64,000 bases of DNA from Podarcis erhardii (lineage: Eukaryota). The stretch lies in NCBI GenBank assembly GCA_964252035.1, contig OZ176202.1. The stretch is one strand, 5' to 3'. Shown piece by piece: positions 1,560 through 64,000 of the stretch (positions are counted from its first letter, which is position 1; the number at the start of each line of letters is the position of its first letter). Position numbers and translations under genes: made by a program. The notes below the pieces were generated by a model. The model did no database searches, was not told where the DNA came from, and saw only the letters and a program-made list of their open reading frames with translations.

Positions 1560-2340
1560 CTAATATTCCCAAGGCCCGGTCCTTAGGTCGCTATGCCGGG
1601 CAAGCCTGCTCTGAGCCGGCTCGGCTCCGGCTCCCCACGGACGGAGACCGTACCCGACTACTGCGGCGCGGGGACGGCGAGCGGCGAGAAGAGCGGCTGC
1701 TGGACGGCGAACGGTACCGGCGGCCTCGCGGGGAAGGCGAGCGTGAGCGGCGCGGGCTCCGGCCCCGCGTCGAACCGGAGGCACCGGAGCGGGAACTGCG
1801 CGAGCCCGAGCTACTGCTCTCTTTGGACCGGCTGGAGGAAGACACGCTACTGGTACGGTACATGGCGCTGCCGGCGGTGGTAGTAGTGGCGGCGGCGGCG
1901 GCGGCTCAAGGAGCCCCGGAGGCCGCCCGCCCTCACTCCTCGCCGAGGCCGCTCCTCCTTGCTCCTCCTGCTGACCATCCTCCCTCAGCACGCTCCATTC
2001 GTGCATGCGCGCGCGCCCCGGACGCAAACGCAAGAGCCTGAGGTTACAAAAAGCTTCCTCGGGCTGCCCCGACAAAATGGCGGATAGGGAAATAGCGGTC
2101 ACGTGCCGCGTACGAGGCCGAGGGAAGAGGCGGGGTTGGGGGGGGGGAGATGCGTCGCGAGACCATCAGCGAGCCCTGCGAATGGCGCACGGACGGACGA
2201 AATGGCGGGGGGCGGGCCCTGAGTCACGTGATAGGGAGGAAGGTAAGCGCAACGGGAGGCGCTCCCCAGTGTAAACTGCAGTGTTATTAGGCTGCCCGCC
2301 TTATTAGGTCCAATCTCCGCCTCCCATGTGTGCGCTAAAT
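1560..2340. promoter_or_regulatory. CpG-island promoter of ZNF318a, possibly bidirectional
   Basis: Very GC/CpG-rich. YY1-type CAAAATGGCGG at 2073-2083, E-boxes GTCACGTG at 2098 and GAGTCACGTGA at 2221, NRF1-like GCATGCGCGC near 2003, and a possible plus-strand donor AG|GTAAGC at 2243. Confidence 0.7.
1654..1863 (-). CDS. ZNF318: ZNF318 (copy a) coding exon 1, Ser/Arg-rich N-terminus; remaining exons lie left of the window
   Basis: GCC-ATG at 1863 gives MYRTSSVSSSSRSKESSSSGSRSSRSG...RSPSPRRSSR (70 codons), then donor CGG|GTACGG at 1653. Resembles the recalled human ZNF318 start (MYRSSARSSVSSHRPK) and its phase-0 end at ..SR|. Lies head-to-head with ABCC10 as in the vertebrate synteny. Confidence 0.8.
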
Positions 2341-6262: not shown

Positions 6263-26867
<20,605 letters not shown>

Positions 26868-37975: not shown

Positions 37976-38248
37976 CTGGATTGAGTTGCAAGTTATCTCC
38001 TCATTTTTTTCCATTTTCTGACTTGTCTTTTTCTGATGAGTCTTTATTTTCAGAAGACAGCTTCCAGGCTTTCTTAAAAATGTTAATCCCCAAGATCAGA
38101 GCTACCTTATCAAGCTCAGATTGCTTTTTATCTGCCGCATCAGAATGCATCTGTAGCTGAGCAACTTCCTTTGCTATCTTCTCTCGTAGTTGGTTCACTT
38201 CCACCAGCAAGGGATCTTTTGCCTTACGCATCTTGCGCATCATCTCCC
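37976..38248 (-). CDS. ZNF318: ZNF318b exon 6 (coiled coil) with in-frame TGA at 38003-38001
   Basis: Acceptor TAG|GG GAG ATG; EMMRKMRKAKDPLLVEVNQLREKIAKEV..SENGKK*; donor CAG|GTAAAA at 37975. Confidence 0.85.
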
Positions 38249-41200
38249 CTAAGCCAGTCAAAGTGGTAGAGTGGAAAGCATAAGAAAATCATTAATACAT
38301 GCAAAATTATTTTGGGTCATCAATTATAAGGTACCATTTTGGTATACCCAAAAGACAGAAGCAGGGTTTGCATTACTGTATGAAGAACTGACAGTTACTT
38401 GCAATGATTTGGTTGCACCCTAATTAATTCCCTGTTTAGGATAATACCCTGAGATAAAAACAAATTATGCAATGTCCAGCATCACCACTTTAGAGGATAG
38501 TAGGGGAAAAGGAAGAATAAAATGAGTGCAGTACCTTCCTGTTTTGTAAGTCTGTTTAACTCAACTGTCAGATAATGCAGTTTCTTCTGTCGTGCTTCTT
38601 GTTCAGCCTTCAATTTCTCTCTTTCCTCCAATACCTAGAAAGGTTTGTGAAGGGAAGGAAGGTATTAAAAATCCCCCTTTCATGGATTACAACCCAACTA
38701 AAACTACAACAATCATTGAAAGTAAATATTTTCATCTTATGCTTGCTAACTCAGCCTGTGATTCATTGCACCCAGCTCCTAACATACTAAATGCCACTAA
38801 ACATGAAACATACTAAAACTTACTAAAGCTTAAAAGCATGCAGGTCCTGCTTTCTGAACAAAATGTGTTCCCAGGAAATCATTTGTTAGGCGTATGTTCA
38901 CATAATGAGCTTATGATTTCCATTATTTCCTATGGGAACACTTCTATTTCGTAATTTGTTTGATCTCTCCCCCTCCCTCCCTGGTTTCTGCCCAAAAGGG
39001 CTGCTGCTGACCAGCAAAACATGAAGTAGGCAAACTCCATCTGTTTGGGTATCTGAATTTGCTGCTTGTGTAGTGAGGTTTGGGTATAATTCTTCGTGTT
39101 TGGCTGAGATTTCAGTTACCAAGTGTTCCAATAGCAGGACCTGCATGTAGATTGTATCCTTAAAGAGAGACTGTTTAAGACCTTAGGGTGAAGAGCAGGT
39201 AATAAACAATAACAACAATTAACAAGGTGTGTCTTGCCACAGTACCATAAAAACAGCCATTAGATAGCTCAAGACATTAGAGGTACATCCTGTTCAAAAA
39301 AACTATACATAATCCAATGTCAAATAAAAAGTGCAGAAAAAAGTTAAAATAAAATTGTATGTGCTTTGAACTTCTGTAAAACGGCAGACCTTAAATCCAA
39401 GAATGTAATCTTAAACAAGGAATCAATTCTGCACTTGGTTTCATATTTCATTATGTGTTAGGAAAAGATGTGCAGTAGAAAAAGTATTACAGTGGTACCT
39501 TGGGTTAAGAACTTAATTCGTTCCGGAGGTCCGTTCTTAACCTGAAACTGCTTTTAACCTGAGGTACCACTTTAGCTAATGGGGCCTCCCGCTGCCGCAC
39601 AATTTCTGTTCTCATCCTGAAGCAAAGTTCTTAACCCGAGGTACTATTTCTGGGTTAGTGGAGTCTGTAACCTGAAGTCTGTAACCTGAAGTGTTTGTAA
39701 CCCGAGGTACCACTGTATATATTTTTAAACTACAGTATAAGGCATTCAGAAGTAAGTCTATAAGGATACTATCCACTTCTCAATAGCAGCAACTACATTG
39801 CTGCTATGTGGAAAAGGAAATGTGGGGGGGGGGGGAGGAAGATACATCTGCTTGTAAGATAAACATTCTCACCTTTCGTTTCTGAACAGCTCGATTTCTA
39901 TCATCAGGTATTTTTTCCTTAGCGCCTTTGGGGGTAGGCTGAGGGAGCAATTTGGAATGAGGAGCAGAGAAAGGGGTTTGAACCATCATAGATGTATTTC
40001 TTTTGATATCACAAGTCCTTCGTGTTGTGGAAATTGTCTGAATAACTCTGACGTTGGAAACTGAATGATTTGGTGGCACTGTTGGAGTACCGTACTGAGG
40101 TGCATTTGGAAATTCAGGATCAGCCTGCTGGGGAGGAGCATACGTGGCCCAGCCAGAAGCTGCATAAGTGAAATACTGTCCATATGGATTATAGCCAGGA
40201 GGGGGCATTGTGGGAGGTGGATAGTTTTGTGGCAGGTGAGTTGCACCGAATGGTAAATAGAATGGAACACTATACTGGGGATATATGGGAGCAGGAAACA
40301 TATGAGGAAGACAAGGTGGGGCAGAGGGAATTGGAGATGCCATGGGAACAGCTTGCTCTTGTGGGAAATGATAATCTTGCCTTACAATTTTGCTTTCAGT
40401 GTGCTTAGAATGTGAAGCAGGAGACATCTCTTTAGATGGTGGGAAATAATCAGGAGAGGGAGAGTGGTTCCACCTTGACTCTGGATAATGAGTGTCACTT
40501 TTACTGCAGTGCCTTTCCTTAAACTCCATAGATTCTTTCCTAGGTTTATGAGAAGCCACTGAACGACGATCAGGAGAATGAGATGCTTTCTTCCCATGGA
40601 GGCGTTCCTGAGTGCGGGCAGCAAGCTTACCAATTTCAGCCACCCCAATGTCAAGACCAATAGTTTTGAGCAAGTCATAAATTTTCTCATGCTCTGGTCT
40701 GGATTCTTCTAAAGTGTCTGATTTTACAGACAGACTAGCAGGAGGAGAGTTTATTTTCTTCCTTCCATGTTCTTTATCACCACTCAATGTTATCCTTTGA
40801 ATAAAAATTGAGTCATCCCCATTATCACCATAAAGAAACTTCTCTTCAGCCTCAACATCATCAAGGAGGCTGTTCCTTCTCTTTTCTTGAGTGCTGGAAG
40901 AATCTGTTTTCATACTCAGAATGTGTGAAAAGCCATTCCCATCCTGGCTGGCTCTTTCATGGGGAAGCAAGAAGTAACTGTGCTGGTCTTCATGCTCTGA
41001 TGTGGACTCATGACACTCTCTCTGATTCAAAAAGCTCCCAAAATTCTGTTTATAATGGGAAATGTTTTGGTTTTGGCCAGAATGCAGCTTCCAATTATGC
41101 ACATTGCCTTCAGATGTTGTATTTGCAGGTTCTACATCTGCATTTTTATTGAACTGTTTGAGGAATTTCACCTCCTCAGTTGAAAAAGGAGCAATGCTGT

Positions 41201-44200
41201 TGGTTCTCTGGGGAAAAGGAGGATCATCTGAAAGAAGAGGGGGCTCTTTGAGAGAGGCAGAACTGCTAGAAAAGACTTCAGGCTAAAAAGAAAGAAATTG
41301 CCATTTGTTACTACATTTTGCAAGGAGGCTAATCACTTTCCCAATCTATTAAGACAGACATAACTTTAATATAAAGGGTTTATAGTCAGTAGTTCATAAC
41401 ACTAACGAAAACTGTAAGACAAAGATAAAAATGGAATTGAAAGAGACAAAATAGTTCCTAAATACCACACTGTTACATCTGCATAAGATGGCCATTTTGA
41501 TTAGGGATGGGCCATACTTTAAGAATGTGAGAACAGTCTGCTGGATCCAGCCAGTGGCCCACCTAGCCCAGAATCCTGTTCTCATAGTGGCCAACTAGAA
41601 GCCCAAGGGAAGCCCACAAGCAAGAGCTGAGAGCAATAGCCCTCTGCCCACCTGCAGTTTCCAGCAACTAGTATTCTGAAGCATACCACCTTCAACACAA
41701 CAGTGAAGGCAGAGCATATCCATCAGGGTTAGCAGCCACTGATAGCCATAACCTCTGTGAATTTGCCAATCCTCTTTTAAAGCCACCCAAGTTAGCGGCT
41801 ATTACTGCCTCTTGTGGGCAGGAATTCCACAATTAAACTATGTGCAGCGTGGAGAAGTACCGTATTTTTCGCCCCATAGGACGCACCGGCTCATAGGACG
41901 CACCAAGTTTTTTGGGGGGGAAATAAAGGGGGAAAAATATTTTCCCCCCCCCAGGCGCTTGTGGGGCCGGCAGCGGGGAGAAGCGCTCTTCTCCCTACCG
42001 CCCGCCTGCAGACCAGGTCCGGGGACAGCAGGAGGACGCGCTGCGCCTCCCAACTGTCCCCGGAGCTTGCGGGGCAGGCAGCGGGGAGAAGCGCTCTTCT
42101 CCCCGCCGCCCGCCTGCAGATCAGGTCCGGGGACAGCGGGAAGACGCGCTGCGCCTCCCCGCTGTCCCCGGAGCTTGCGGGGCTGGCGGCCGGGAGAAGC
42201 ACGCGTCTCCCCGCCGTCAGCCTCCAAACCACATCGGGAGACAGCAGGATGGCGGCGTTCCGCCTCCCCGCTGTCCCCCGACCTTGTGGGACTGGTGCTG
42301 CGGCTCTCCTGAAGCCTGGAGAGCGAGAGGGGTCAGTGCGCACCGACCCCTCTCGCTCTCCAGGCTTCAGCGAAAGCCTGCATTCGCCCCATAGGACGCA
42401 CACGCATTTCCCCTTCATTTTGGGAGGGGGAAAAGTGCGTCCTATAGGGCGAAAAATACGGTACTTCCTTTTGTCTGTCTTGAATCTTCCAACATTCAGC
42501 TTCCTTGGATGTCCATAAATTCTAGTATTATGAGAAAGAGAAAACTTTTCTCTAGCTCCTTTCTCCATGCTGTGCATAATTTTATACACTTTTGTCATGT
42601 CACTTTCACTGCCGACAATCAACACTCCTGCCTGATCGTCTTTAATAGGGCACTGGAAGAGAAAGTGACCGATTATCCCCCACTAAAGGCCAACCCTGGC
42701 TTGCAACACTGATCTAATGAGCTATAAAACTGCCAGTACAGCGAGGTAAGATTTGTCAGCTTGATACCTTGGTAATAGCTGTTCAATTCTTGCCCCTACT
42801 CAAGCAAACCCTCGTTCACAGTGAGGGCAATGAGAGGGCTTTGTTTGCCCTGAATAACACTGTCATTTAGACAAAGCTGAGGGGCTATGCAGTACCCTGG
42901 GAATCATTCTGCGATGCCTGATTTGCTGAGATTACACAGCAATAATAGAGGAGAAGAAAAACCATGTCAAATGAGTAACTGAGGAGCAACACAGTGGCTG
43001 TGGACAGGGACAAACATATGTAAAACAATACCTTTGGAGATTTGAAATCAACATTTTCCACCAAACCCAAAGTGTTTTTGCACCAAAACATTCACAAGCA
43101 AGCATTGTGTGCAGCTCTGGTTATGGCAGCTACAAAAAGATAATTCCCACAGGCATATTGTTACTATTATCAGAAACGAACTGATTTTTTCATATGATGA
43201 AACCCTGAGATAGAGAGAGCAGGATGCAAAAAAGGTACTTGCCACATCACAGTTGGCATGGTTTTGAAAAGCATTATTTATTTACAGTATTTAGTATTGG
43301 AACCACCTGCCAAGGTGCTCTCTCTCCACAGCTACACAACAGAAAAACAATCCAGTCATGATAGTATGAAATGTCACCTGTTCAGAGCATTCCATACCAG
43401 TTTGAGAGAATGTTTGCAGTCCAATCCAACTAGGTAATTCTAGTATTAAGATTCTTTTATTAGGTTCAAGCAGGTTAAAAAAATGCACAACATGGTAAAT
43501 TTACTGCATAAATTGCCAACTCTTCAATTTCAGCCTACACACAGATGTGAATAATAGTACCCTTATTTTGTTTGCATTCAACCCATTGCAAGTGCCATTA
43601 AATGGTTCAAAACAAATCCCAGATGTACCATTACAAAAACCACCTTAATTTGGTGGTCTTGACTATTCTGATTTTTCTACTGTAGAGGTAAAAAACCCCA
43701 TCATGTCCAGATTAATAATAACAACAATAACAATAATAATTTATTATTTGTATCTCAGCCACTCTGGGCATCTTCCAGAATATATATAGAAACATAGTAA
43801 AAAATTAAACCTTATAAAGCTTTCCTATACAGGGCTGGCTTCAAATGTCAAGGTGTTAAAACATTTCTGGCACCTTGCCGCAGGTTCTATCTATAGGAGA
43901 AAAACATTACACGTATACAAGTGGGAGGCTCTTCTGTGTGATAGCATCACAGCTACAGAATGTACTGCCAAGGATAGTGAATCTGGTGCTCGAACCAGGT
44001 AAAAATGTTTGTCACCCAGCCACTGCAAATTGTTATATTATCTAGCTGAATAGTTCTGCCATTCTCAACTTTATTGTATTCTCGGTTGTTTTAGATTGTA
44101 GTACAGGTGGCGATCACCTTGTACCTGTCTACCTGACATGTGACCACCAAGACATGCGCTGCTTTCAGTTTTGGAAGGGAGCAAAATGGGCTTACGCACA

Positions 44201-47200
44201 ATTGCTGACATGCACAATGACCTGGAAAGCAACCCCCACACTAACAGGGAATCGCCTGTATTTAAATTCCTATGTATACTACCTGGAAATCTGTTTCTGG
44301 AAAGCTTAGGGGTTTTTTTAATAAGTAAGGATTTTGATTGTGTGTGAATTTTAAAGCTATATGAATAAGCTGAATGAAAACTTTTGAAAGGTAGAATTGC
44401 TCATGAAGTGGGATGCTCTAAATACCAAAACTAGTAAAATGTCCTCATTCCAAGAAAAATGGGATCCAATATGCTGATTATTCTACAAGTTATACCAAAC
44501 AAACTCCACAACTGTGAGGGAAGCCTGGATATTATTCTGAGGGTATTTGTTCCAGAATTAACAGAGATTAAGTTAAGTAATAAAATTTAAGATTCAATAA
44601 AAGAGCAGTAAAAAGTGTAAAGGACAGTTTAACCAGAGAGAGAAATACATGCCAAACCTGCACCGAAGGATCATCCCTGTGTTTCTTCAGAATAGATTTT
44701 TTGGGCATTGCTGTGATTTCATTAGGTCTATAAATATATTTATGTTCAGGGTCTTGACTGCAATTTCTGCTCAGCTCCTCCTCTTTGCTTTTTCTCCCAG
44801 CATATTCAAGTACACGTAAATCCACATCGTGAAATGGCAGGCTTGGGCTCTTACTAGGATCTTGTTTGCAGAAGTTCCACGTCCCAGACAAGAAATCCTC
44901 AGGCTCTATGTCTATCTTAAGCAGTCTGTCATCTCTGTCATGTTTAGGAAGTTCTAGGTCTTGCCCTGTATCCTCTGATGGCTTCCCAAGTAGCATTCTA
45001 TACCTTTCCGTTTCCCTTGGGAGATATTGTAGATGGTTATAGCTGGTGCTATAGTCTGATTGATGGAGGAAATCATCTCTAAAGCGATAATCCTCATCTT
45101 GTCCTGTATTGAAAGGTGAAGAAGGAGTTTCCTTGGTCAAGGAATACCGCTCAATGCTTTGAGGGCGTGGAAGGCCACTGCTAAATATTGGACCATCAGC
45201 CAAGTCATCCCTAATAAGAGAGGTACAGAACAAAATCAGCAACTTGGAATAACCCCCCCGAACTCCAGCTGGCATAAAGTGCCCTTTGTATGACAACTCA
45301 ATACTTCTTGCCTTGAACCCAAGATGGCTGGTTCTGAAGATTTTATATACTCAGCAATAACTTCACCCCTTGACAGTCCAAACTATGCTGCAGTGAGCGA
45401 AATAATTCATTTCAGAAGTCTTGTTATTTATGCGCATAGGAGATATGCAACAGGAACAGAAGGAACAGAAGCCCAAACTTGAGAGCACTCAGGTTCCAGT
45501 TTGTCTATTTATCTTACACAAAAGGCCTGCATACTTCAATTATTTTATGGTGGATTTGAACAACACACATTTAGGGTTGGTATCTGAAGAAGTGTGCATG
45601 CACACGAAAGCTCATACCAAGAACTGACTTAGTTGGTCTTTAAGGTGCTACTGGAAGGAATTTGTTTTGTTTTGATTTAGGGTTGTGTTTAGCTTTTTTA
45701 GATGGTCTCATAAAAAAAAAAAAGAACACAAATGTCTTGCTGGCTATCTAGGGGGAAAGTAAGCAACAGAACATTTTGGTATGTTTTACAATAGTAGAAT
45801 TCCCCCTTTCATCAGCAACAATATTGTAGTTCCAAATTCAGCAAAGTTTCTTACCCTCCACTCCTCAAATAATTTCCTTCACATACTGTACTGTTTTCTG
45901 CATGTTACTTTAGCAAAAAAACAAAACAAAAAAACCCCCTCAGAATTACTACTGAAAATAACTTCCATGCATGTTTTTAAATGAGGATTGCTGAAAGCAT
46001 TGAACCTAAATACATGTGTTCATCACACTCAGCCTGCTGAATGTTTTCCCAACAATAATTGTGAAGAGATCTTCATGCACCTAACATGTCAAAAACAGTA
46101 TGAAGCAAAATATCAAAATATGGAAGACAACTTCCTTATCAGTTCAAAGCAGTGTTCAAAATTAGCCAGGCACCAGGCGCATTTTGCCCCAGGCTTTTGA
46201 CCACTTGCAACCAAGTGAAGATGCCTGGGCACCAGGATGGCACCCGACATCACCATCTGCGGATCACTGGATCTGGACTGTTTTCACACACTAATATCTC
46301 ACTAATACCCTGTAAAATGTTATCAGTTACATTTTATCTGCACAAACGGAATGAATTTCTGGAACCAAATTGCTTTTTCTGTGCAGCCTGAGGAGGAACA
46401 GTCACCATTAAGAAAAAGAGGTAAATTTAGGTCAATATATATGTATGTGGACTATCCCTGGATCAAGTGACGTTTCTTCTTCCAGTTCTCAAAGCTCTTA
46501 ACCTAGTTCAAGGTAGTCAGAAGTTTAACTCAGAATCAATCATGGAAAGTCCATCATTTGAAAACTAAGACTGGAGCTGTCTTGCCCCAAAATGGAAACT
46601 AGGCATTCCATTTTGACGACAGCAAACTTGGTTTAAGGAACCATTTGGGAACCTAGCATATATATCTAATTTTCTAATACTGCAGGAGAATAAGATCTAT
46701 AATGGGAAACTGGATTCAACCGAAAAAAATTGTCCATCAAGACACAGACCTATACCAGCTCAAGCTATTATAAGCCCTTAAAAAAGGGGAGCGGGGGGCG
46801 GTTCATAGGATCAAGATATCAGTTGAAAAAAAGTTATACCGTATTTTTCGCTCTATAGGACGCACTTTTTCCCCTTCAAAAATGAAGGGGAAATGTGTGT
46901 GCGTCCTATGGAGCGAAGAAGCCATAGCCCCGCAACCCTCTCCCGGCTGGAGAGGTCACGGGCGGCTATGGCAGGAGCATCTTTAGCTGCACGCCACCTC
47001 TCCAGCCGGGACAGCGCGCACGGGGCTAAAGAAGCCCCCGCGACCCTCTCCCAGCTGGAGAGGTGATGCGCGGCTATTGCAGCAGCCTCTTTAGCCGCGC
47101 ACCACCACTCCAGCCGGGACAGCGCGCGCGGGGCTAAAGAAGCCCCCCGCGAACCTCTCCCAGCTGGAGAAGTGACGCGCGGCTATGGCAGCAGCCTCTT

Positions 47201-50200
47201 CGCTGTACGCCTTTCCGCTGCTCCCCGACCTGCCCTTTGGGGCTGGTGGTGGGCTTCCCCCCGTCAGCCCCAAAGAGCAGGTCGAAAGGAACCTGAAGCC
47301 TGGAGAGCGAGAGGGGTCGGTGCGCACCGACCCCTCTCGCTCTCCAGGCTTTTGAGGTAGCCGCCTGAAGGCGACTGAACGCACCTTAAACGGCACCTTG
47401 TTTTAGAGGGGGAAAACAAGAGGGGGGAAATTCTCCCCCTCTCTGCGCAGCAGCTCCTGCCACTTCGCTGAAGGGGCACTGGGCAGAGAGGGGGAGAATT
47501 TTTTTTCCTTGTTCTCCGCCCTCTAAAACAAGGTGCATCCTATAGTCCGGTGTGTCCTATAGTGCGAAAAATACAGTAATTTGCATTGTTCTTATCACCA
47601 CGACAGAGTTAAAATCACTTTAACAGTACCCTGTTAGCAGAGACACTGAGCAATGTGCCCAGCAATAAAATACTGGCCAAAGTTTATTGAACAAATCAAA
47701 CTCCAGCACAGGGCTGTCTTAAGCATATGCGGCGCAGGGGTGCAAAGATCCGCCCGGCGCCCCTCCCAAAGTTGCCCAGTTGTCAACCTTTTTTAGGGGG
47801 GGAACCCCAAAGTTGCTGACCTTTTTAAGGAAAGGTTCCCCAGAGTTGTCAGGCACCTGGTTGGCGAAAAGAGGCGAAGCTGCTCACTCTCTTTCTCTCT
47901 CTCAGGGAGCTGCCGCCAGCACACTGCGAGTCCCAAAGTCGGACCGAAGTGGAGAAATGCACAGGAAAGGCAAGCGGCGGCAACCCTTTGGCCCACCTGT
48001 TCCTTCCACCACCCAGGGCAGCATGAGGAGGGGCTGCTTGCCTGCTGCTGCTGCTGCTTCCAGCGTCGGAGGAGCGAAGGGACACCGCTAAAGCCGAGGC
48101 GGGAAAGGCATGCTGAGGAGAATGCTGCTTGCCGCCTTTTCTGTCGCTGCTGTTGCCGTCGTCTCTTGTCCTCCTCCTCCTCCTCGCTGGGTGCGTGTCT
48201 GTCTGCTTGCCCACCCACCTACCTGCTTGCTTGCTCTCTGGCTCCCGGAAGAGCCCACTGCAGTGCTCCGACCAACAGACAGGCTCTTCCCGGACTCAAC
48301 TCTCGAGCTCTGGACTCTCAGCCTGGCGCCCCTGAGAGCCTGGCACCCGGGTGCCCTGCACCCCTAGCGCCTATGGGTAAGACAGCCCTGCCCAGCTGAA
48401 AGAAAGAAGTTTTGCCTTTCGACAGGCCTTGTTGACAGCAGTCTTAGATTCAATGAAACAGCCACAAGAAAATTCACTCACAGCTAGACAGCTTACCAAA
48501 GCAGCTACTACCTCAGTAAAGATCATGCCACCCGCCCTGGTCACAACTTACCCCCTCTTGTCTAGATGACTTACAGACAACATAATTAACCCTTAAATTA
48601 CACACTGAATTATCTCTGCTGTTATACTTCCATATTCTACATACTAACAGCAAATTAATACTGGATCTTCTGTAGCCAAAATGACCACCCAAACATTAAG
48701 AGGTGGCTATATTTTGGCCCAGGGAAATCCCAAGATTTGCAGATGCACAAAAAATATTTTCAAAAACTCTAAGGAGAGACATAAGGAAATAACCAGCCCA
48801 AGGAAAACTGAATAAGCTCTGTCAACATGGAATATTGGGTGAGTGTTGGGGGCAAAAGCACAGGACACTGATGGGGGAGTGAAGAGGAATGGAATGGAAT
48901 AACTGAGAGAACCCTGATCAGCAGCACTCTATGTGGCAACATTTTCTTGTGGGTCCAATTTGGGTTTTCCTTATTCTAGTGTTGATATAGCTTTAACACT
49001 TTCACACTGAACAATGAAACTTCCCGGTTGCTTCTACTTCTAGAAGTGGCTCTAGAAGTAAAAGCAACTAGGAAGTTTCATTGTTCAGTGTGAAAGTGTT
49101 TTACAACTTCTGTCATTCACGCAATTATCTTTCCTAAATATACCCTTTTTCATGTACATGTCTGTGTATATAACCCTATTCTAAATAGAAACCTGCTGTT
49201 GGGGATCTGAAGAAGAAATTTCACCCCTAAAAATGGATTAGGAAAACAGGATGTTTGGGCAGTGAAAGCAAATTATAATATAGATCTTCACACAGTTTCT
49301 GTACCTGCAGGAACATGTGAGTTTAAAATAGCAGCTAAATTGTCATGAGGTAACAAGAAATTTACTAAAAGGGTGTTTCATCATTTTGTTTTTCAACTGG
49401 GGTTCATTTTTAGAAAAGAAGCTGTTTCAGTTCCACATCTACTCTCACGGGTTACTCAGAATCCACTGAAGACAAAACTGTCAGAAAAATTCAAAGAAGT
49501 AGATGTAAAAACTAATGATTTCAATCAAACAAAAGGTTTTCAAAACTGAGCTATGTACTTTTTATCCATCTCAATCCTGCTCTTATTTATAAAAAGACTG
49601 TATGAAATTAAACGGAGACATGTTTTCAATACCTCTCTTTAATTCCTAATATTTTAAATCCATACCAAGGGAGGTATTAAAAATATGTCAATAAGAGAGC
49701 TAAATATGTCTGTCCTATATGTGAGATTCCCAACATGTCCTATACATTTCCCACAACGTCTTACAATCAGGTTGTGGGGTTTTATATTACCCATGGGACA
49801 AGTACCAAGAAAGATAACCAAGGTTAATTATGAGAGACTGGCCTTCAGAGAAGCCTTACCTGTTCCCATCACTCAAACTTGGAGAGCGTTTGTCTGGAGA
49901 GTGAGAGCGCTTGCCCGGAGAGTGAGAGCGCTTGCCCGGAGAGTGAGAGCGCTTGCCCGGAGAGTGAGAGCGCTTGCCCGGAGAGTGAGAGCGCTTGCCC
50001 GGAGAGTGAGAGCGCTTGCCCGGAGAGTGAGAGCGCTTGCCCGGAGAGTGAGAGCGCTTGCCTGGAGAGCGTCTCTACAATTAAAATAACAAGACATCAG
50101 AATTCTTACGGCCAAGTAAGTTACTATGGGGCAGGGGGTTCATGATGCTATTTAAGAAATAAGCCAATATTAATGCAGTATGCAAATTTTACTACAATTG

Positions 50201-52496
50201 ATGTGGATTTGAAAAACACTACATGCATCTAATGTTTATGTGCAGTGAAGACATCTGATAATATGTACACCAACAATGTAATGAGACAATGCAGCTAAAT
50301 TGACAATTGTACCATTTAGAAGAATAAGAAGCCTCCCAATTTATTGTCAGTGACACAAACCACCAAAAAACCACTGTCCACCCCCATTTTTCACAGAAAA
50401 GCGGTCAATTCTAGGAATGGGTTGTTTCTTAAAATTAATTAGTAATGGAACAGGGGGATAGCCCATCAGTCGTATAGGGCACTTCCAAGTTCTAATAGAC
50501 ATTTTTAGATAGGTGAACTTATCTCTTGGAAGCATTTATCTCCTCACTCTGCTTCCTCCTGCTATCTAGATAATCAAATATCAGTTTATTAAGCCAAGAT
50601 ATGTGCAGAGTCACAAATCCACATGCAGCTTGCTCAGCTCCCTGTTCCCAAAGCCAGGCATCAAAACTAACAGCAGTGTACTGTTACATCCAAACACTGG
50701 CTTCCAAACAAGACAGGAACTGGAAGCAAATTTTATTTCAATGGCTTCATTTTCTAGCCTCCTTGGGAGCCATTGACTAGCTTTCCAATTATTTGTTAAC
50801 AGAATAACTATGGTTAACTGGTTTCCTGGCATATTTCCCACTTGAACAAAGGGGGCAGGGGACCAAAGAGATTGCATGCGGGTTCAGTAAATTGATGCAT
50901 ATCTCAGCTCATTAATCATCCAAATGCAGCCTCTTTTCTTCTTCATCTCTCCCCCAGCCTTTAAGATCTTTAAGTATTTGGTTATTGACAAATATGAAAA
51001 GTGAAGCACAATCACTTCCAAAGGCTAATCTTCTCTGAAATTCACAGTTTGATCCTAACCATGACTATCCATTAGCTGTGTTGATTTTGGTTGAAATAAT
51101 TTTCAAGTAATCCAACCAGGTTTTAGGCGCCCAATATGCCTTAGCAGCCATCCTACTTTTCAAATTCATTCAACGATCCACGAACCTTTGGTAAAAATAA
51201 ACCTAAGCTCCTCCCCACCACAAGCCAAGTCTACAGGTATTGCCTTAACCTGTTAAGCGTATTTTGTGTGCGGGCAAAAATCACCGGCCACTTTCCTTCA
51301 TGTAGAAATGAAGGAAAGAAAGGAGCGTGCAGCTCAACCTGAGACGGGCCTACTCAGAAGTCTTACTAAATCCAAGGTGATTTCCTCTCAGATGTAGGAT
51401 ACACAGGGCTGTTGCACATTTAATGTTTCTCTACTTTGAGGCAAAGCTTCCCCTCCAGCTGTCATTAAGCCTTTCGACCTCCTTCGCATCACCACAGAGC
51501 CAAGGATGGGATCGCAGGTAAGATTGCTTAGGGATGCTCAAGGCTGCTGGGCGCATGCCCAGAAATGTGGGCCATGATATTATATATAACTAAGTTGGGG
51601 GCAGGAAAACGGCTGGCTATTCCAGTAAGTGGCAGTTAGGTGCAAGAGATGGGGGATGCTCCTTGGGGAAGGTACAGTGGTACCTCGGGTTAAGTACTTA
51701 ATTCGTTCCGGAGGTCCGTACTTAACCTGAAACTGTACTTAACCTGAAGCACCACTTTAGGTTGGGGCCTCCTGGTGCCGCTGCACCACCACAGCACGAT
51801 TTCTGTTCTCATCCTGAAGCAAAGTTCTTAACCTGAAGCACTATTTCTGGGTTAGCGGAGTCTGTAACCTGAAGTGTATGTAACCTGAAGCGTATGTAAC
51901 CCGAGGTACCACTGTACTGAGGCAAGCGGGCGGGCGTTACCCCTGGACGCTGGGGAGGCGGAAGAAGAAGAGTTTGGATTTGATATCCCGCTTTATCATT
52001 ACCCTAAGGTGTCTCAAAGCGGCTAACATTCTCCTTCCCCTTCCTCCCCCACAACAAACACTCTGTGAGGTGAGTGGGGCTGAGAGACTTCAGAAAAGTG
52101 TGACTGGCCCAAGGTCACCCAGCAGCTGCATGTGGAAGTGCGGAGACCCGAACCAGGTTCCCCAGATTAGGAGTCTACCGCTCTTAACCACTACACCACA
52201 CTGGCTCTCGGAGGCGGCTTAAATTCGCTCAGGCCGGGCCAATTCCCCAACCCGTAACCCCCTCAGCCTCCGCCGCCACGGGCAGAGCGTACCCGACTAC
52301 TGCGGCGCGAAGGCGGCGACCGGCGCGAAGAGCGTCCGCTGGAGGGCGAGCGGTGCCGGCGGCGGCTCCGCGGAGACCGGGAGCGCGAGCGCGAGCGGTG
52401 CGAGCTGCGGCCTCGAGCCGAACTGGAGCTGGATCCGCTGGCTTTGGACCGGCTGGAAGACGGCTTGCTCGAACGGCTGCTGCTGGCGCGGTGCAT
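38001..52496 (-). CDS. ZNF318: ZNF318-like paralogue (copy b), six exons, 909 aa as written, no zinc-finger exons
   Basis: Exons 52496-52293, 50074-49860, 45210-44658, 41282-39873, 38634-38535 and 38248-38001(TGA). All are GT-AG, phases 0/2/0/0/1, total 2730 nt. ZNF318 motifs: RDDLAD, DEDYR, MPKKSILKK, FLLPHERASQDGNGFSHILSM, EEKFLYGD, IYDLLKTIGLDIGVAEIGKLAARTQERLHGKK, EEREKLK..EARQKK, KDPLLVEV, KKQSELDKVALILGINIF. Confidence 0.85.
38535..38634 (-). CDS. ZNF318: ZNF318b exon 5
   Basis: 100 nt, TAG|GTATTG...GAAG|GTAC; VLEEREKLKAEQEARQKKLHYLTVELNRLTKQE(G), compared with recalled human VIEEREKLKNDREARQKKMYYLRTELERLHKQQG. Not in the ORF track. Confidence 0.9.
38870..39145 (-). repeat. Interspersed repeat, inverted copy of 34630-34990
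   Basis: See 34630-34990; accounts for the spurious ORF 38898-39146. Confidence 0.7.
39490..39715. mobile_element. Tc1/mariner-type MITE
   Basis: TA-CAGTGGTACCT ... AGGTACCACTG-TA; same family as 51675 and 59511. Confidence 0.85.
39873..41282 (-). CDS. ZNF318: ZNF318b exon 4 (1410 nt)
   Basis: TTTAG|CCT GAA GTC...AAA CGA AAG|GTGAGA; open for 470 codons and contains HERASQDG and LLKTIGLDIGVAEI. Confidence 0.93.
41521..42610 (-). mobile_element. CR1 LINE 3' fragment, interrupted by a MITE
   Basis: CTGCTGGATCCAGCCAGTGGCCCACCTAG..CCTGTTCTCATAGTGGCCAAC resembles the reverse complement of a CR1 3' end. The sequence GGAGAAG-TA-CTTCCTTTTGTCTGTCTTGAATCT is split at the TA by the MITE. Confidence 0.6.
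41860..42461. mobile_element. Tc1/mariner-type MITE with GC-rich internal tandem repeats
   Basis: TA-CCGTATTTTTCGCCCCATAGGACGCAC ... GTGCGTCCTATAGGGCGAAAAATACGG-TA. Confidence 0.88.
44658..45210 (-). CDS. ZNF318: ZNF318b exon 3 (553 nt)
   Basis: TTATTAG|G GAT GAC TTG...GTG CAG|GTTTGG; (R)DDLADGPIF..DEDYRFRDDFLHQSDYS..YRPNEITAMPKKSILKK..PSVQ. Confidence 0.92.
45585..45665. mobile_element. Short Penelope-like retroelement terminus
   Basis: CTGAAGAAGTGTGCATGCACACGAAAGCTCATACC..TTAGTTGGTCTTTAAGGTGCTACTGG resembles squamate Penelope ends (from recall). Confidence 0.4.
46839..47576. mobile_element. Tc1/mariner-type MITE with ~110-bp internal repeats and a perfect palindrome
   Basis: TA-CCGTATTTTTCGC ... 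GCGAAAAATACAG-TA; opposite orientation to the copy at 41860. Confidence 0.85.
47709..48390. mobile_element. hAT-type non-autonomous DNA transposon
   Basis: 13-bp TIRs CAGGGCTGTCTTA / TAAGACAGCCCTG; no exact 8-bp TSD. Confidence 0.7.
48995..49100. repeat. Long inverted repeat (50-bp arms, 6-nt loop)
   Basis: AACACTTTCACACTGAACAATGAAACTTCCCGGTTGCTTCTACTTCTAGA-agtggc-TCTAGAAGTAAAAGCAACTAGGAAGTTTCATTGTTCAGTGTGAAAGTGTT, 3 mismatches. Confidence 0.9.
49860..50074 (-). CDS. ZNF318: ZNF318b exon 2, built from a 21-bp coding minisatellite
   Basis: TTTTAATTGTAG|AGA CGC TCT CCA GGC ... GGG AAC AG|GTAAGG, 215 nt, phase 0 in and phase 2 out as exons 1 and 3 require; RRSPG-(KRSHSPG)7-KRSHSPD-KRSPSLSDGN(R). 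Confidence 0.85.
49896..50063. repeat. 21-bp minisatellite, 8 units (GGAGAGTGAGAGCGCTTGCCC)
   Basis: Seven identical units plus one ending CCT; counted from the sequence and consistent with the ESESACP repeats in the ORF track. Confidence 0.95.
51675..51914. mobile_element. Tc1/mariner-type MITE
   Basis: TA-CAGTGGTACCTCGGGTTA ... TAACCCGAGGTACCACTG-TA. Confidence 0.88.
51960..52209 (-). mobile_element. Squam3-type tRNA-derived SINE
   Basis: Minus strand reads GAGAGCCAGTGTGGTGTAGTGGTTAAGAGCGGTAGACTC (A/B-box head) ... GATATCAAATCCAAACTC(TTC)n tail, with a GGAGGCGG TSD. Confidence 0.8.
52293..52496 (-). CDS. ZNF318: ZNF318b coding exon 1
   Basis: MHRASSSRSSKPSS...RSPSSGRSSRRSPPSRRSSR (68 codons). 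Shares CCGACTACTGCGGCGCG and CTTTGGACCGGCTGGA with 1654-1863 and has the same CGG|GTACG donor. Confidence 0.85.
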
Positions 52497-61003: not shown

Positions 61004-63448
61004 TTACAGCTCAGTCGTTTTCCTGGGTTCTATCAAGACCGTACTCAACATGCCCACTTGGCACTCTTGGTCCTGGAGTTTCCTTGCAGACTGCGAGGGG
61101 CTTTGGCACCTCCGGCGCCCCCTCTGCCAGTTCTTCAGCAGCACCAACACAGTTACCAAGACTAGGAGGGCCGTGAGCAGCCCAAACACCAGCACTAAAA
61201 TCAGCTGCGACTGACTCAGCCCCGAGTCCTGCTGAGTCACCACCTCTTTCACGGAGATCAAGAGCCCTCCCCCGTTTGATTTCTCACTATAGGTAGTGAC
61301 CCGCTTCCCAGTCACCACAACCCGGACGGGCTCAGACTGGGTTGTCCAAGGGTTGCTGCTGGTCGTGCTTCTCACGACGTCGTTGCCGTGCCCCTTGGGA
61401 TCAGCGTGAAACGCGGTGACCCACGTCGGCTCGGGAGCAAGGAGCTCACAGGTCTTGCCGACAAAGCCCTCGGGACACAGGCAATCGAAATCGTTGACGC
61501 GGTCGTAGCACTTTGCCCCGTTTCTGCACGGCTGGCTGGCGCAGTCGTCAACATTGATGCTGCAGAAACGCCCTTCAAAGCCAGTAGGGCATTGGCAGGA
61601 GAAGCGGTTGATGCCGTCAAGGCAGGTGGCACCGTTGGCACAGGGACGCATCAGGCAATCGTCGACGTCAATCTCGCAGTGGGTGCCAATGAATCCTGCC
61701 AGGCACTTGCAGGTGTAGTTGTTAGCAAAGCCATTCTGGTCCAGGCACTCTCCGCCATTCTTGCAAGGGGACCTGAAAGGAGAGAATGGGGACCAATCAC
61801 AACATCCATATGGGCCGTCCTACATTTTATTCATCTGTTTAAATACCCCTTAACCATTAGCATTTCTAATAGCAGTCATTATTATTATTTTATTATTTGT
61901 ACCCCACCCATCTGACTGGGTTGCCCCAGCCACTCTGAGTGGCTTCTAAGTGCACGTAAAAGGTGCATGCAAAAATAAGCCACACAGGAAAAAATAACAA
62001 CAAAAGTCGTCATAAAACTGAACGCTGCCTTGAAATCCTTGTTCGTGAAATGGTGCGTTTTAAAGCCTTTTACGGCTGATCCTATACGCGTTCACTCAGA
62101 AGTAAGCCCTACTGAGCTTAATGGGACTTATTCCTAGGCAAAGGACTGGAGCCTTTAAAAGGTTTTGCTCCTTGCGCCTGCCTTTCCTCCCATCTATTTC
62201 TGCTAGGATCTCTCACCCTGCCTTATCACATGGCCCCGTCTTCAGCTCACAGTTCTTTCCATGGAATCCTTCAAGGCACAGGCAGGAATATTCCCCATCT
62301 CGGTCGTAGACGCACTGGGCTCCATTCTGGCACGGGGTCTGGTGCTCACAGACATGCACGTCTGAAAGAGATGGGGGGGGGGAGAGGAGGACGAGGAGAA
62401 AATGCAGGTCAAAAGTACTCAGGGCTGGTTTTTCATGCCAGACACCCACACCCACACATAAAAGTTCTCTCTTTTTTAAAATTTACTGTGATAATGGAGG
62501 CTGTACAAAGAAAAGGTGGCCAGCTAGCACAGCATCCTCCTTCGCAGTGTCCAACCAGATGTCCCCTGCTCTTCAGAGGCACAAGGCCACTGATTCTGAA
62601 GGTGGAAGTGGGCTCCTGTATCGGAGCAGAAGCTGCCGCCTTACTTCCTCCTAGCCCAGCACTGTGTACAGTTGTACCTTGGATCCCAAATGCCTTGGTA
62701 CTCAGACACCTTGGCTCCCAAACGCCGCAAACCCGGAAGTGAGTGTTCTGGTTTGTGAACATTCTTTGGAACCCAAACGTCCAATGGGGCTTCCGATTGG
62801 CTGCAGGAGCTTCCTGCAGCCAATCAAAAGCCGTGCTTTGGTTTCCAAACGAAAGGACTTCCAGAACGGATTCCGTTCGACTTCCAAGGTATTCTGACTA
62901 GCAGTGGTTCTCCAAGGCCTTAGGACAACTTCATGTAGCTGGGAAGTATTGGAGTCAATAGCAAAAGTGGTTGTTTTCTCCAGGGAGGCCTCAAAGCAGA
63001 AAATGGGAAGACGGCCGAATTACTGCTGCTAATAAGTCTGTGCGGTTCTTCTGTTAAGGCTGAATTGCTGTTGTTCGGAAATGGCTTCATTAATCAGTAG
63101 TGAACGTGTTGTGCCTGGAGAGGACCCGAGTTTCAGCCTTTCAAGGCAGCAGCAGCAGAAGCTATTGTCTGAAACTCTGGAGAGCAGGTACCAGCCCATG
63201 TGTTCTGGCTTGGTATAAGGCAGCTTCCCAATAAGCTTCTACTGCAGTGCCCTCCTTTCCCTGTCGTCCCCACTCTCCTCAATAAGTCCCCACCCTGTTC
63301 CAAGTGGAGCGACGCACCTTTCTTGCACAGCTTGCCAGCCCAGCCACTTTGGCAGATGCATTGCCAGGGTTGGTGGCACGTTCCATGCTTGCAGCCTGGC
63401 ATCCTCACACACTGTTCACAGTATTCCCCTTCCCAGCCTTTGTCACAC
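61004..63448 (-). CDS. DLK2: DLK2 (protein delta homolog 2 / EGFL9), last three coding exons; 5' exons beyond the window
   Basis: Exons 63448-63318 (131 nt), 62361-62217 (145 nt) and 61772-61004 (769 nt, stop), with compatible phases. EGF repeats ([18 protein letters not shown]; [21 protein letters not shown]), LLISVKEVV, a TM helix ([23 protein letters not shown]) and the tail [15 protein letters not shown]. Confidence 0.95.
62669..62896. mobile_element. Tc1/mariner-type MITE related to 24188-24414
   Basis: TA-CAGTTGTACCTTGG start, shared GGCTCCCAAACGCCGCAAACCCGGAAGT core, degenerate right TIR. Confidence 0.7.
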
Positions 63449-64000
63449 CTGCAGAAGGAAAACCAGAAAGTCAGAGCAGGAGAACACCACCGCAGGCACC
63501 AAGCAAAGGCACTAACAAAGCCATGTGCAGTAAACATCGCAAGGCATTAGACTGGTGTTTCATAGTCATGGGACTCAGCTGCATTAGTCAAAAAACAACG
63601 TTTTGAATGCGTTATAACATGCAACACCAGATGGTGCCAGAGAGCAAAAGAAAAATTCTATGTGATTTTTATACAGTGGGGTTTTTTGTGTGTGGTTGTA
63701 ATAATGATTTAATTTCTGACTTATTTATAGCAGTTCCCCCCGTGTGTAGATCCACCAATGGTCTCTGGTCCTGGTGATGGGTGGAGTCAGGATCCAGGAT
63801 CCTTTTCAGTCTCAATAGTATGATAGGAACAAGTACCTCACACAAGAATGTGAGGAGAATTCTTGAAGGAAGCAGCAGCAGGGGGATGGAGCCAAGGGTG
63901 AGGCAAAATGGAGGCACTTTGGGCAGGAGGCAAGAGGAGGGGTGGGGCTTATGAGTACCACAAGTTTTGGTGAAGAGCGTCAACCAGCCAAGATTGCCGC

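What the first reader, a model, noticed from the sequence alone, without database searches (positions are those of the whole stretch)
49860..50074. Hidden exon: a 21-bp minisatellite encodes a (KRSHSPG)8 heptad phospho-repeat in ZNF318b
Seen: the repeat appears in the ORF track only in meaningless frames (ESESACP, RVRALAR, ASALTLR). In the remaining minus frame it sits between a good acceptor and a GTAAGG donor, begins RRSPG (the recalled start of human ZNF318 exon 2) and bridges exon 1 (phase 0) to exon 3 (phase 2) exactly. The recalled conserved exon-2 core (SDSLEKSLRITVGNDHF..LSDRLGSP) is replaced by eight basic Ser-Pro heptads. Seven units are identical, implying recent expansion and probable length polymorphism that always stays in frame. 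Inference: this is a tunable RS/SP low-complexity domain (SRPK/CLK/CDK substrate, speckle or condensate targeting), loosely analogous in format to the Pol II CTD.
Basis: partly seen in the sequence, partly recalled or inferred. Interest (0 to 1): 0.78.

Follow-up and report, generated by a model that had tools for sequence, protein, structure and literature searches.

The report
Repeat-coding exon 2 of lizard ZNF318-like
The 21-base tandem repeat is a genuine, spliced coding exon of a short ZNF318 gene copy in a wall lizard (Podarcis). Public gene models of three sister species already contain it, and its arginine/serine heptads are an old squamate feature of ZNF318 that has merely re-expanded here.

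Summary
A 21-bp array lies at 49882-50069 (9.0 copies, 97% matches, seven DNA-identical units). On the minus strand it reads RRSPG-(KRSHSPG)7-KRSHSPD-KRSPSLSDGN. It is bounded by an AG acceptor (exon starts at 50074) and a CAG|GTAAGG donor (exon ends at 49860).

The exon is 215 nt long and joins exon 1 (phase 0) to exon 3 (phase 2). With it, a six-exon model with canonical splice sites gives an intact 909-aa ORF.

RNA contigs from two studies carry the exact 49860>45210 junction. By 14 of 14 diagnostic variants these contigs are Podarcis muralis, so they come from a congener, not from the window's own species.

The exon is not really hidden. The P. muralis RefSeq model XP_028580143.2 and the P. 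raffonei and P. lilfordi models contain the same exon with 7, 8 and 6 heptads. The heptads are not paralogue-specific either. Long ZNF318 of squamates carries about 2-12 (RRSRSPG)-type heptads at the start of exon 2, ahead of the conserved core, and a short Elgaria copy has about 25. Turtle, birds, mammals and shark show none. The short copy shared by Podarcis and Rhineura lost the core, and Podarcis then re-expanded one heptad.

A phosphorylated RS-like disordered segment is plausible but inferred. A tunable function is not supported: dN/dS is 0.46-0.98.

This is a correct reading of low novelty.

The parts
49860..50074 (-). Exon 2 of the short ZNF318 paralogue (ZNF318b). It is 215 nt long, enters in phase 0 and leaves in phase 2, and encodes RRSPG-(KRSHSPG)7-KRSHSPD-KRSPSLSDGN.
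   Evidence: Sequence and translation. Spliced RNA contigs join 49860 to 45210. The same exon is present in public models of three Podarcis species. It is required for the intact 909-aa ORF.
49882..50069 (.). 21-bp tandem array (coding minisatellite), 9.0 copies, seven of them identical.
   Evidence: TRF. Unit listing. Copy number differs by whole units in P. muralis (one fewer) and P. lilfordi (two fewer), and is equal in P. raffonei.
50075..50076 (-). Acceptor AG of intron 1, preceded by tgtcttgttattttaattgt.
   Evidence: It is identical in three congeners. The exon 1 to exon 2 junction itself was not seen in reads here.
49858..49859 (-). Donor GT of intron 2 (CAG|GTAAGG).
   Evidence: The joint 45209/10-49859/60 has ends CT..AC on the + strand, in runs X1 and X9.
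52293..52496 (-). Coding part of exon 1 (68 codons, RS-rich), ending in phase 0 at the donor CGG|GTACGC.
   Evidence: tblastn of the P. muralis model gives 94.5% identity. The P. muralis model reads ...SRRSSR|RRSPGK.
44658..45210 (-). Exon 3 (553 nt). It is the conserved ZNF318 N-terminal region DDLADGPIF...PKKSILKK...
   Evidence: phmmer finds 20 ZNF318 relatives. RNA contigs cover it at 97.5% identity.
39873..41282 (-). Exon 4.
   Evidence: tblastn of P0035. Canonical AG/GT boundaries and an open frame.
38535..38634 (-). Exon 5.
38001..38248 (-). Exon 6 with the stop codon. The protein ends ...SEKDKSENGKK, before any zinc finger.
   Evidence: The P. muralis 904-aa model ends the same way.
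1591..1863 (-). Exon 1 of the long copy (ZNF318a), head to head with ABCC10. Given as context only.
   Evidence: ORF list. It matches the N-terminus of P. muralis ZNF318 X2, P0124.

Best explanation
The array is the body of constitutive coding exon 2 of a roughly 900-aa ZNF318-like paralogue. This paralogue is the short, zinc-finger-less copy lying between ABCC10 and DLK2, and the genome belongs to a Podarcis wall lizard.

Shown: squamate ZNF318 carries a variable run of basic Ser-Pro heptads, (R/K)RS(R/H)SPG, at the 5' end of exon 2, followed by a conserved core. In the paralogue shared by Podarcis and Rhineura the core is gone and only a short stub remains (KRLYPV-KHSRSPV-KHSPSLSDAN in Rhineura). 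In Podarcis one 21-bp unit of this stub is amplified to 6-8 copies.

Inferred: the duplication was specific to Lacertoidea. The core was lost by deletion in the stem of the short copy. The amplification arose by replication slippage or unequal exchange. In this genome the array was homogenised or recently expanded.

Because the unit is 21 bp, every gain or loss keeps the frame. The exon cannot be skipped without a frameshift, since exon 1 ends in phase 0 and exon 3 starts in phase 2.

Inferred: the peptide extends the RS-rich disordered N-terminus of exon 1. Each heptad offers an R-S dipeptide and an R-x-x-S-P site, so it is probably multiply phosphorylated by SR-protein or proline-directed kinases. 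It probably contributes to nuclear or RNP association, as RS-like regions do. Copy-number change is most likely nearly neutral within a tolerant disordered region.
For: - Anatomy and frame.
- Gene model: only a six-exon model that includes this exon gives an open 909-aa ORF with AG/GT at every boundary.
- Splicing: a joint at 45209/10-49859/60 (GT..AG on the minus strand) appears in RNA contigs of two studies. X1 has a 619-nt contig at depth 85.6 with 67 nt inside exon 2. X9 has a 979-nt contig at depth 65.4 with 82 nt inside exon 2, and it continues 345 nt past exon 3. These contigs carry 14 of 14 P. muralis-specific variants and the KSS unit variant (50014 G>T).
- Public models: P. muralis XP_028580143.2, P. 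raffonei XP_053238819.1 and P. lilfordi CAI5770718.1 contain the exon with 7, 8 and 6 heptads. The genomic alignment shows identical splice sites and whole-unit length differences.
- Ancestry of the heptads: long-copy exon 2 has about 9-12 in Rhineura, Anolis and Pogona, 6 in Lerista and 2-3 in Podarcis a, Candoia and Varanus. A short Elgaria copy has about 25. Turtle, birds, opossum, echidna and shark have none.
- Orthology: Rhineura b groups with Podarcis b (SH-aLRT 95), sister to their own long copies (82).
- Isoform parallel: mouse Zfp318 makes 902-aa and 2025-aa isoforms (PMC11520953), so a roughly 900-aa product is a known form of this protein.
Against: - The RNA evidence comes from a congener (P. 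muralis), not from the window's own species, and it consists of assembled contigs, not raw reads.
- The exon 1 to exon 2 junction (52293>50074) lay outside the 5.8-kb stretch that could be laid. It rests on gene models and on the ORF.
- A 1.6-kb contig runs unspliced from the repeat into intron 1 in three runs, at depth 9-22.
- One run (X2) showed the repeat but no exon 3 contig.
- dN/dS of the gene against three congeners is 0.46, 0.66 and 0.98 on few substitutions. The paralogue is only weakly constrained, and the protein may matter little.
- Nothing here tests phosphorylation or localisation.
- Each heptad has a single RS dipeptide, so it is a poor match to the long RS runs that SRPK prefers (my own knowledge).
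Confidence: 0.9

Rival explanations
1. The heptad array is an adaptively tunable phospho-module. Copy number sets the strength of speckle or condensate partitioning, or of kinase docking. Selection acts on length, and the module is specific to this paralogue.
For: Copy number differs among four Podarcis genomes: 6, 7, 8 and 8. P. muralis isoforms X2 and X3 differ from X1 by exactly 2 and 3 heptads, which could be allele lengths. Arrays of the same format vary from 2 to about 25 across squamate ZNF318 genes. Every unit keeps the S-P and R-S positions. Substitutions fall mainly on codon 2, a CpG codon.
Against: The format is not paralogue-specific. A 21-bp unit stays in frame whatever selection does. 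The gene shows weak constraint, with dN/dS of 0.46-0.98. Rhineura's orthologue works with about one heptad. There are no functional data of any kind.
Confidence: 0.12
2. The minisatellite is intronic and only mimics an exon by chance. The true transcript uses another exon 2, or none.
For: The unit has no stop codon in at least four of six frames, so openness alone means nothing. The intron holds 394 frame-compatible AG..GT candidates. Unspliced contigs cross the acceptor.
Against: Spliced contigs end exactly at the predicted donor and continue into exon 3. Three independent gene models include the exon. No other candidate in the intron resembles ZNF318, and this one ranks in the top 3 of 394 by a crude splice score. 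Without it the ORF is out of frame. Rhineura's model has a homologous short exon ending ...SPSLSDAN.
Confidence: 0.03
3. The exon is spliced, but ZNF318b is a decaying, transcribed duplicate. Its protein has no maintained function, and the repeat is drifting junk inside a dying gene.
For: dN/dS is close to 1 against P. lilfordi (0.98) and is 0.66 and 0.46 against the others. The Podarcis b clade sits on a long branch of 0.54. The exon-2 core and all zinc fingers have been lost.
Against: The ORF is intact in four Podarcis genomes. An 866-aa ORF is kept in Rhineura, a deep split within Lacertoidea. RNA contig depth of 65-86 is comparable to an expressed gene. The short form parallels the natural 902-aa mouse isoform.
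Confidence: 0.15

Closest known systems
Annotated 'zinc finger protein 318-like' genes of Podarcis muralis (XP_028580143.2), P. raffonei (XP_053238819.1) and P. lilfordi (CAI5770718.1)
   Same: They share the six-exon, roughly 900-aa gene, exon 2 with RRSPG + (K.SHSPG)n + KRSHSPD + KRSPSLSD(G/V)N, and identical splice sites. Genomic identity is 95.5-96.7%.
   Different: Heptad number is 7, 8 and 6 against 8 here. Their arrays carry KSS, KCS and KHS variants and synonymous changes, whereas this genome's seven units are identical at the DNA level.
Exon 2 of long squamate ZNF318 (for example Anolis carolinensis, Pogona vitticeps, the Rhineura floridana long copy, and P. muralis ZNF318 X2)
   Same: The position in the gene and the opening RRSPG or RYSPG are the same. 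The heptad format, basic-basic-S-basic-S-P-G, is the same. The exon ends in ...SLSD..R just before DDLADGP.
   Different: Their heptad is RRSRSPG (two RS dipeptides), and it is followed by the conserved 45-residue core SESSVEQNLRITVGNDRYGIDTPERKRLSDRLGSPVD. Here the heptad is KRSHSPG and the core is missing.
RS / RS-like domains of SR-related nuclear proteins (for example SRRM1, SRRM2; recalled from general knowledge, not tested)
   Same: A basic, Ser-rich, Pro-containing low-complexity sequence that is tandemly reiterated, in a protein linked to RNA processing. ZNF318 is a matrin/U1-type zinc finger protein (PMC7532188).
   Different: There is only one RS dipeptide per seven residues. This paralogue has no RRM and no zinc finger. 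No phosphorylation or speckle data exist.
Short isoform of mammalian ZNF318/Zfp318 (TZF, 902-924 aa in mouse)
   Same: A roughly 900-aa product that shares the N-terminal exons and lacks most of the long isoform (PMC11520953).
   Different: In mammals it is a splice isoform of one gene. In lizards it is encoded by a separate duplicated gene. The mouse paper reports a zinc finger motif in both products, whereas this lizard model ends before any.
RNA polymerase II CTD heptads (YSPTSPS)
   Same: A period of seven residues, with an S-P in each unit.
   Different: There is no sequence relation. This array is basic rather than Tyr/Thr-containing, and it has 8 copies against 26-52. The similarity is one of format only.

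Membership tests
ZNF318 gene family (short 'ZNF318-like' paralogue) | Sequence homology of the flanking exons to ZNF318. | tested here: met
   The exon 3 translation finds 20 ZNF318 or ZNF318-like proteins, the best at E 1.7e-55. They are named. The P. muralis model maps to six window exons at 80-97% identity.
ZNF318 gene family (short 'ZNF318-like' paralogue) | Conserved exon-2 core (SESS.EQ.L.ITVGND.Y...DRLGSPVD). | tested here: not met
   The core is absent from the window exon and from all Podarcis b and Rhineura b models. It is present in long copies and in other squamates' short copies.
ZNF318 gene family (short 'ZNF318-like' paralogue) | Matrin/U1-type C2H2 zinc fingers. | tested here: not met
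   The model ends at 909 aa (...SENGKK*), as does the 904-aa RefSeq model. Pfam gives no hit. The precomputed label is PF27978 ZNF318_helical only.
ZNF318 gene family (short 'ZNF318-like' paralogue) | Neighbourhood with ABCC10 and DLK2. | tested here: met
   ABC-transporter ORFs lie on the + strand at 7368-25523. EGF-repeat ORFs lie at 61004-63537. The P. lilfordi locus has an ABC transporter next to the gene.
Internal coding exon | Canonical AG...GT boundaries and phase compatibility with neighbouring exons. | tested here: met
Internal coding exon | Spliced transcripts that contain it. | tested here: met
   The 3' junction is present in contigs of two RNA studies of a congener. The 5' junction was not examined, and no run of the window's own species was recorded as RNA.
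Coding minisatellite (in-frame VNTR) | Tandem units of 10 bp or more, with a unit length that is a multiple of 3. | tested here: met
   Period 21, 9.0 copies.
Coding minisatellite (in-frame VNTR) | Copy number varies between genomes. | tested here: met
   There are 6, 7, 8 and 8 heptads in four Podarcis genomes, with gaps of exactly 21 and 42 bp. Variation within a species was not shown. The P. muralis isoforms X2 and X3 are only suggestive.
RS domain / SR-related protein | Runs of consecutive RS/SR dipeptides. | tested here: inconclusive
   Exon 1 has several (HRSRSRSRSPRSRRRHRS). The heptad itself has one RS per unit.
RS domain / SR-related protein | Phosphorylation by SRPK/CLK and nuclear speckle localisation. 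| not testable with these tools
   No proteomic or imaging data are available here.
Pol II CTD-like heptad array | The Y-S-P-T-S-P-S consensus. | tested here: not met
   The unit is K-R-S-H-S-P-G. Only the period and one S-P are shared.

The most novel reading that the evidence does not exclude
Squamates evolved a length-unstable heptad RS module, (R/K)RS(R/H)SPG, at the start of ZNF318 exon 2. It has 0 units in turtle, birds, mammals and shark, and 2 to about 25 units in lizards and snakes. It expands and contracts independently in lineages and in independently duplicated short copies. Its copy number modulates phospho-dependent nuclear-body partitioning or RNA-processing activity of ZNF318. 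The homogeneous eight-unit Podarcis array would then be a recent, possibly polymorphic, functional allele.
Probability: 0.12. Interest if true: 0.5.

Novelty: new member of a known kind. Interest (0 to 1): 0.22.

Why it matters
Biologically it is a clean example of a coding minisatellite inside an RS-like disordered region. It has a traceable history: an ancestral squamate heptad run, a lineage-specific gene duplication, loss of the conserved core, and re-expansion of one unit. It has limited reach. The exon is already in public gene models, the paralogue is weakly constrained, and no function is attached to the repeat. If repeat length proved to affect ZNF318 behaviour, it would offer a natural allelic series for studying how RS-repeat valency sets nuclear-body partitioning.

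Tried and rejected
- Pfam scans of the window's exons and of the P. muralis short and long proteins gave no family. The local library lacks PF27978, which appears only as a precomputed label.
- A word search with residues 1-140 of the P. muralis protein was meant to find transcript-derived fragments crossing the exon 1-2 junction. It returned nothing at E<=1e-8 because low-complexity words swamped the 8000-candidate limit. That blank means nothing.
- The look-up of the Rhineura short protein's locus failed because it is not on record. Its exon-2 DNA and splice sites could not be compared.
- Another exon 2 in intron 1: of 394 AG..GT, frame-compatible, open candidates, none is ZNF318-like. The others in the top three by crude score lie in interspersed repeats. 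Rejected.
- Origin of the unit from a transposable element: an interspersed hairpin element in the same gene carries a 16-mer that matches the unit core at 14 of 16 positions. Judged a coincidence, because the heptad is conserved at protein level across squamate long copies. Not followed further.
- An Rfam scan of the very deeply covered intronic spots gave only sub-threshold hairpin (miRNA-like) hits. These are repeat elements, not part of the finding.
- Repeat-length typing from DNA runs was not attempted. Only k-mer contigs were on offer, and they cannot cross seven identical 21-bp units.
- One protein cluster looked up in passing (P0066) turned out to be primate/human ZNF318. It was not fetched, compared or searched further. 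The mammalian comparison used rabbit and opossum proteins only.
Full report
**1. The observation**

Tandem Repeats Finder reports a single array at 49882-50069: period 21, 9.0 copies, 97% matches, no indels. On the minus strand the stretch 50074-49860 translates to RRSPG, seven KRSHSPG, KRSHSPD, then KRSPSLSDGN. The seven KRSHSPG units are identical at the DNA level (AAGCGCTCTCACTCTCCGGGC). The flanking units are degenerate copies.

The exon is preceded by ...tgtcttgttattttaattgtAG and followed by CAG|GTAAGG. In this frame a TAG sits on the acceptor itself (50075-50077) and a TAA directly follows the donor. There is no ATG, GTG or early TTG. That is why the mechanical ORF list shows only the other three open frames. 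The window has no N.

**2. The frame**

Exon 1 starts at ATG 52496 and ends at 52293 with donor CGG|GTACGC. That is 204 nt, so it ends in phase 0. Exon 3 begins at 45210 after ctctcttattAG, and 45210 is the third position of a codon in the long open frame. The 215-nt repeat exon (215 = 3x71+2) therefore joins the two exactly.

Mapping the P. muralis protein on the window gives six pieces. A search over nearby AG/GT sites finds one combination that is open throughout:
- 52496-52293
- 50074-49860
- 45210-44658
- 41282-39873
- 38634-38535
- 38248-38001

This model encodes 909 aa. Leaving the repeat exon out breaks the frame. Among 394 frame-compatible AG..GT candidates in intron 1, the repeat exon ranks in the top three by a crude splice score. 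It is the only candidate with ZNF318-like composition.

**3. What gene and what organism**

The exon 3 translation finds 20 relatives in the 1.84-billion-protein library. All that carry names are ZNF318 or ZNF318-like. The nearest named protein at 90% clustering is XP_028580143.2, 'zinc finger protein 318-like isoform X1' of Podarcis muralis (904 aa).

Its N-terminus reads ...SRRSSR RRSPG KRSHSPG KSSHSPG KSSHSPG KRSHSPG KRSHSPG KRSHSPG KRSHSPD KRSPSLSDVNR DDLADGP.... This is the same exon in the same place. The same cluster holds models of P. raffonei (909 aa) and P. lilfordi (905, 895 and 830 aa).

The gene region of the window is 95.5% identical to P. muralis, 96.7% to P. raffonei and 96.1% to P. 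lilfordi. The window therefore comes from a further Podarcis-like lacertid.

The window layout is as follows:
- exon 1 of a long ZNF318 copy at 1591-1863 (-)
- ABCC10-like ORFs on the + strand at 7368-25523
- the short copy at 38001-52496 (-)
- a DLK-like EGF gene at 61004-63537 (-)

**4. Transcription and splicing**

No holder of the stretch is recorded as RNA. The tool lists small contig sets guessed to be RNA. I laid four of them (X1, X2, X9, X13) on 44600-50400, which is 5801 letters and within the operators' limit.

Two runs from different studies show one and the same joint: 45209/10 to 49859/60, skipping 4649 nt, with ends CT..AC on the + strand (GT..AG on the gene's strand).
- X1 has a 619-nt contig at depth 85.6, with 67 nt inside exon 2.
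- X9 has a 979-nt contig at depth 65.4, with 82 nt inside exon 2 and 345 nt running on past the end of exon 3.

Intron 2 has depth 0-2 in the same runs, so these sets are spliced RNA. The exon 3 parts differ from the window at 14 places, and all 14 are the letters of the P. muralis genome. One repeat contig carries 50014 G>T, which turns KRS into KSS as in P. muralis. The RNA evidence is therefore from a congener. It is probably the same kind of data that supports the RefSeq model, so it is direct but not fully independent.

Three limits apply:
- The exon 1 to exon 2 junction lay outside the stretch.
- Contigs cannot cross seven identical units.
- A 1.6-kb contig at depth 9-22 runs unspliced from the repeat into intron 1 in X1, X2 and X9. 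I cannot explain this (note in the notebook).

**5. Comparison of the exon among Podarcis genomes**

The loci of the three congeners align with the window without any change at the acceptor or the donor. They show gaps of exactly 21 bp (P. muralis) and 42 bp (P. lilfordi) inside the array. P. raffonei has the same length as the window. Heptad counts are 8 (window), 7, 8 and 6.

Unit variants are:
- CGC>AGC, TGC or CAC in codon 2 (KSS, KCS, KHS)
- synonymous CGC>CGT, CCG>CCA or CCT, and AAG>AAA

There are no stops or frameshifts. The window's array is the only fully homogeneous one.

P. muralis isoforms X2 (890 aa) and X3 (883 aa) differ from X1 by exactly two and three heptads. I suspect these are allele lengths read as splicing, but this is not shown.

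**6. Where the heptads come from**

In part that is what I find. Long ZNF318 proteins of squamates open exon 2 with RRSPG or RYSPG followed by (RRSRSPG)-type heptads. Then comes the conserved core SESSVEQNLRITVGNDRYGIDTPERKRLSDRLGSPVDSLSDVDR, then DDLADGP of exon 3.

Approximate counts by eye and by pattern:

| Group | Copy | Heptads |
|---|---|---|
| Rhineura, Anolis, Pogona | long | about 9-12 |
| Lerista | long | 6 |
| Candoia, Notechis, Varanus | long | 3 |
| P. muralis (RRSTG RRSCSPG WHSRSTG) | long | 2-3 |
| Elgaria | short | about 25 |
| Gopherus, Anser, Apteryx, Numida, Monodelphis, Tachyglossus, Callorhinchus | long | 0 |

The non-squamates go straight from RRSP(S/G)L to the core.

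The heptad format is thus a squamate-wide property of ZNF318 exon 2 and is not specific to this paralogue. The loss of the core is what is specific to the short copy of Podarcis and Rhineura. Rhineura's short protein has KRLYPV KHSRSPV KHSPSLSDAN between exon 1 and exon 3. That corresponds to the window's RRSPG / KRSHSPD / KRSPSLSDGN without the expansion. The final SLSD(G/A/V)N lines up with the SLSDVD that ends the core in long copies. An internal deletion therefore explains the structure better than a replacement.

**7. History of the paralogue**

A quick maximum-likelihood tree was built on the exon 3 region (37 rows, 204 columns, SH-aLRT only). It puts the window with the Podarcis short copies (support 100). 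These group with Rhineura's short copy (95). That clade is next to the long copies of Podarcis and Rhineura (82). Short copies of geckos, snakes and iguanians group with their own lineages' long copies.

This suggests separate duplications, or gene conversion, in several squamate lineages. It also places the core loss before the Podarcis-Rhineura split. The tree rests on one short, fast-evolving exon, and four rows have long end branches, so I treat it as indicative.

The stem of the Podarcis short copies is long (0.54). dN/dS over exons 3-6 between the window and the three congeners is 0.46, 0.66 and 0.98, based on 8-19.5 synonymous differences. Constraint is weak. The ORF is nevertheless intact in four Podarcis genomes and in Rhineura.

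**8. Likely function**

Nothing here measures function. From the sequence, exon 1 is RS-rich (HRSRSRSRSPRSRRRHRSPSSGRSSRRSPPSRRSSR) and the heptads prolong this basic Ser/Pro-rich region. Each unit has one R-S dipeptide and one Ser followed by Pro with Arg at -3. From general knowledge of kinase preferences, that suits proline-directed and CLK/DYRK-type kinases better than SRPK, which prefers long RS runs.

ZNF318 is described as a matrin-type zinc finger protein found near the HUSH subunit TASOR and RNA-processing factors (PMC7532188). In mouse it is a testis-expressed gene with 902-aa and 2025-aa products (PMC11520953). A roughly 900-aa product is therefore a known form, encoded here by a separate gene.

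My best reading is a phosphorylatable, disordered RS-like spacer whose length drifts nearly neutrally. The 'tunable' reading is possible but unsupported. The CTD comparison holds for period and S-P only.

**9. Novelty and verdict**

The exon is already part of public gene models in three congeners. Full-text searches found no paper that discusses lizard ZNF318 or these heptads.

The thing is a new, undescribed member of a known kind: an in-frame coding minisatellite in an RS-like region. The only part that goes beyond routine annotation is the squamate-wide, length-variable heptad run. Interest is low to moderate.

One protein cluster that proved to be primate/human (P0066) was not used further. 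No N stretch was involved.

Noticed in passing
window 50046-50400 and upstream to about 51620: In three RNA-like contig sets of P. muralis, a 1.6-kb contig (depth 22, 9 and 10) runs unspliced from inside the repeat, across the acceptor, into intron 1. Intron 2 has depth 0-2. It could be a retained intron part, an internal start or another transcript.
   Followed up: no
P0035, P0088, P0090 (P. muralis RefSeq isoforms X1, X2, X3): The three 'isoforms' differ only by 0, 2 and 3 heptads inside exon 2. This looks more like allele-length differences between sequenced individuals than like splicing.
   Followed up: partly
proteins P0001-P0130; tree: Short, zinc-finger-less 'ZNF318-like' genes seem to have arisen separately in Lacertoidea, geckos, snakes and iguanians. 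Each groups with its own lineage's long copy, and each mimics the short splice isoform of mammals. The alternative is gene conversion.
   Followed up: partly
window 38001-52496 against L001-L003: dN/dS of the short copy over exons 3-6 is 0.46, 0.66 and 0.98 against three congeners, and intron mismatch is 2.5-3.5%. The gene is weakly constrained.
   Followed up: yes
window 42308-42378, 47292-47362, 25885-25900: An interspersed element with a roughly 35-nt hairpin carries CTCTCGCTCTCCAGGC. This matches the minisatellite core CTCTCACTCTCCGGGC at 14 of 16 positions. In all, 12 matches to the degenerate 16-mer were found against 0 expected, and 7 of them are the array itself. Probably a coincidence.
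   Followed up: partly
window 45570-45763 and 46734-46927; 108-bp tandem units at 41950-42290 and 46928-47200: RNA contig depth is above 10,000 at two intronic spots next to 108-bp tandem repeats. These are transcripts of a genome-wide repeat family. Rfam gives only sub-threshold hairpin hits.
   Followed up: partly
window 1591-1863 (-): Exon 1 of the long ZNF318 copy stays open past the ...RRSSR donor position (VRSPSVGSRSRAGSEQACPA). P. muralis isoform X2 and several other squamate models use this extension (...GSEQACP|RRSTG). The short copy hits a stop after VRSARGGGG at the same place.
   Followed up: no
window 27168-27458 against 63304-63606: Similar ORF translations (…WHPHTLF.VF.FPA.VTP…) appear on the strand opposite a DLK-like EGF exon, once downstream of ABCC10 and once in the DLK-like gene. 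This fits a remnant of a duplicated block.
   Followed up: no
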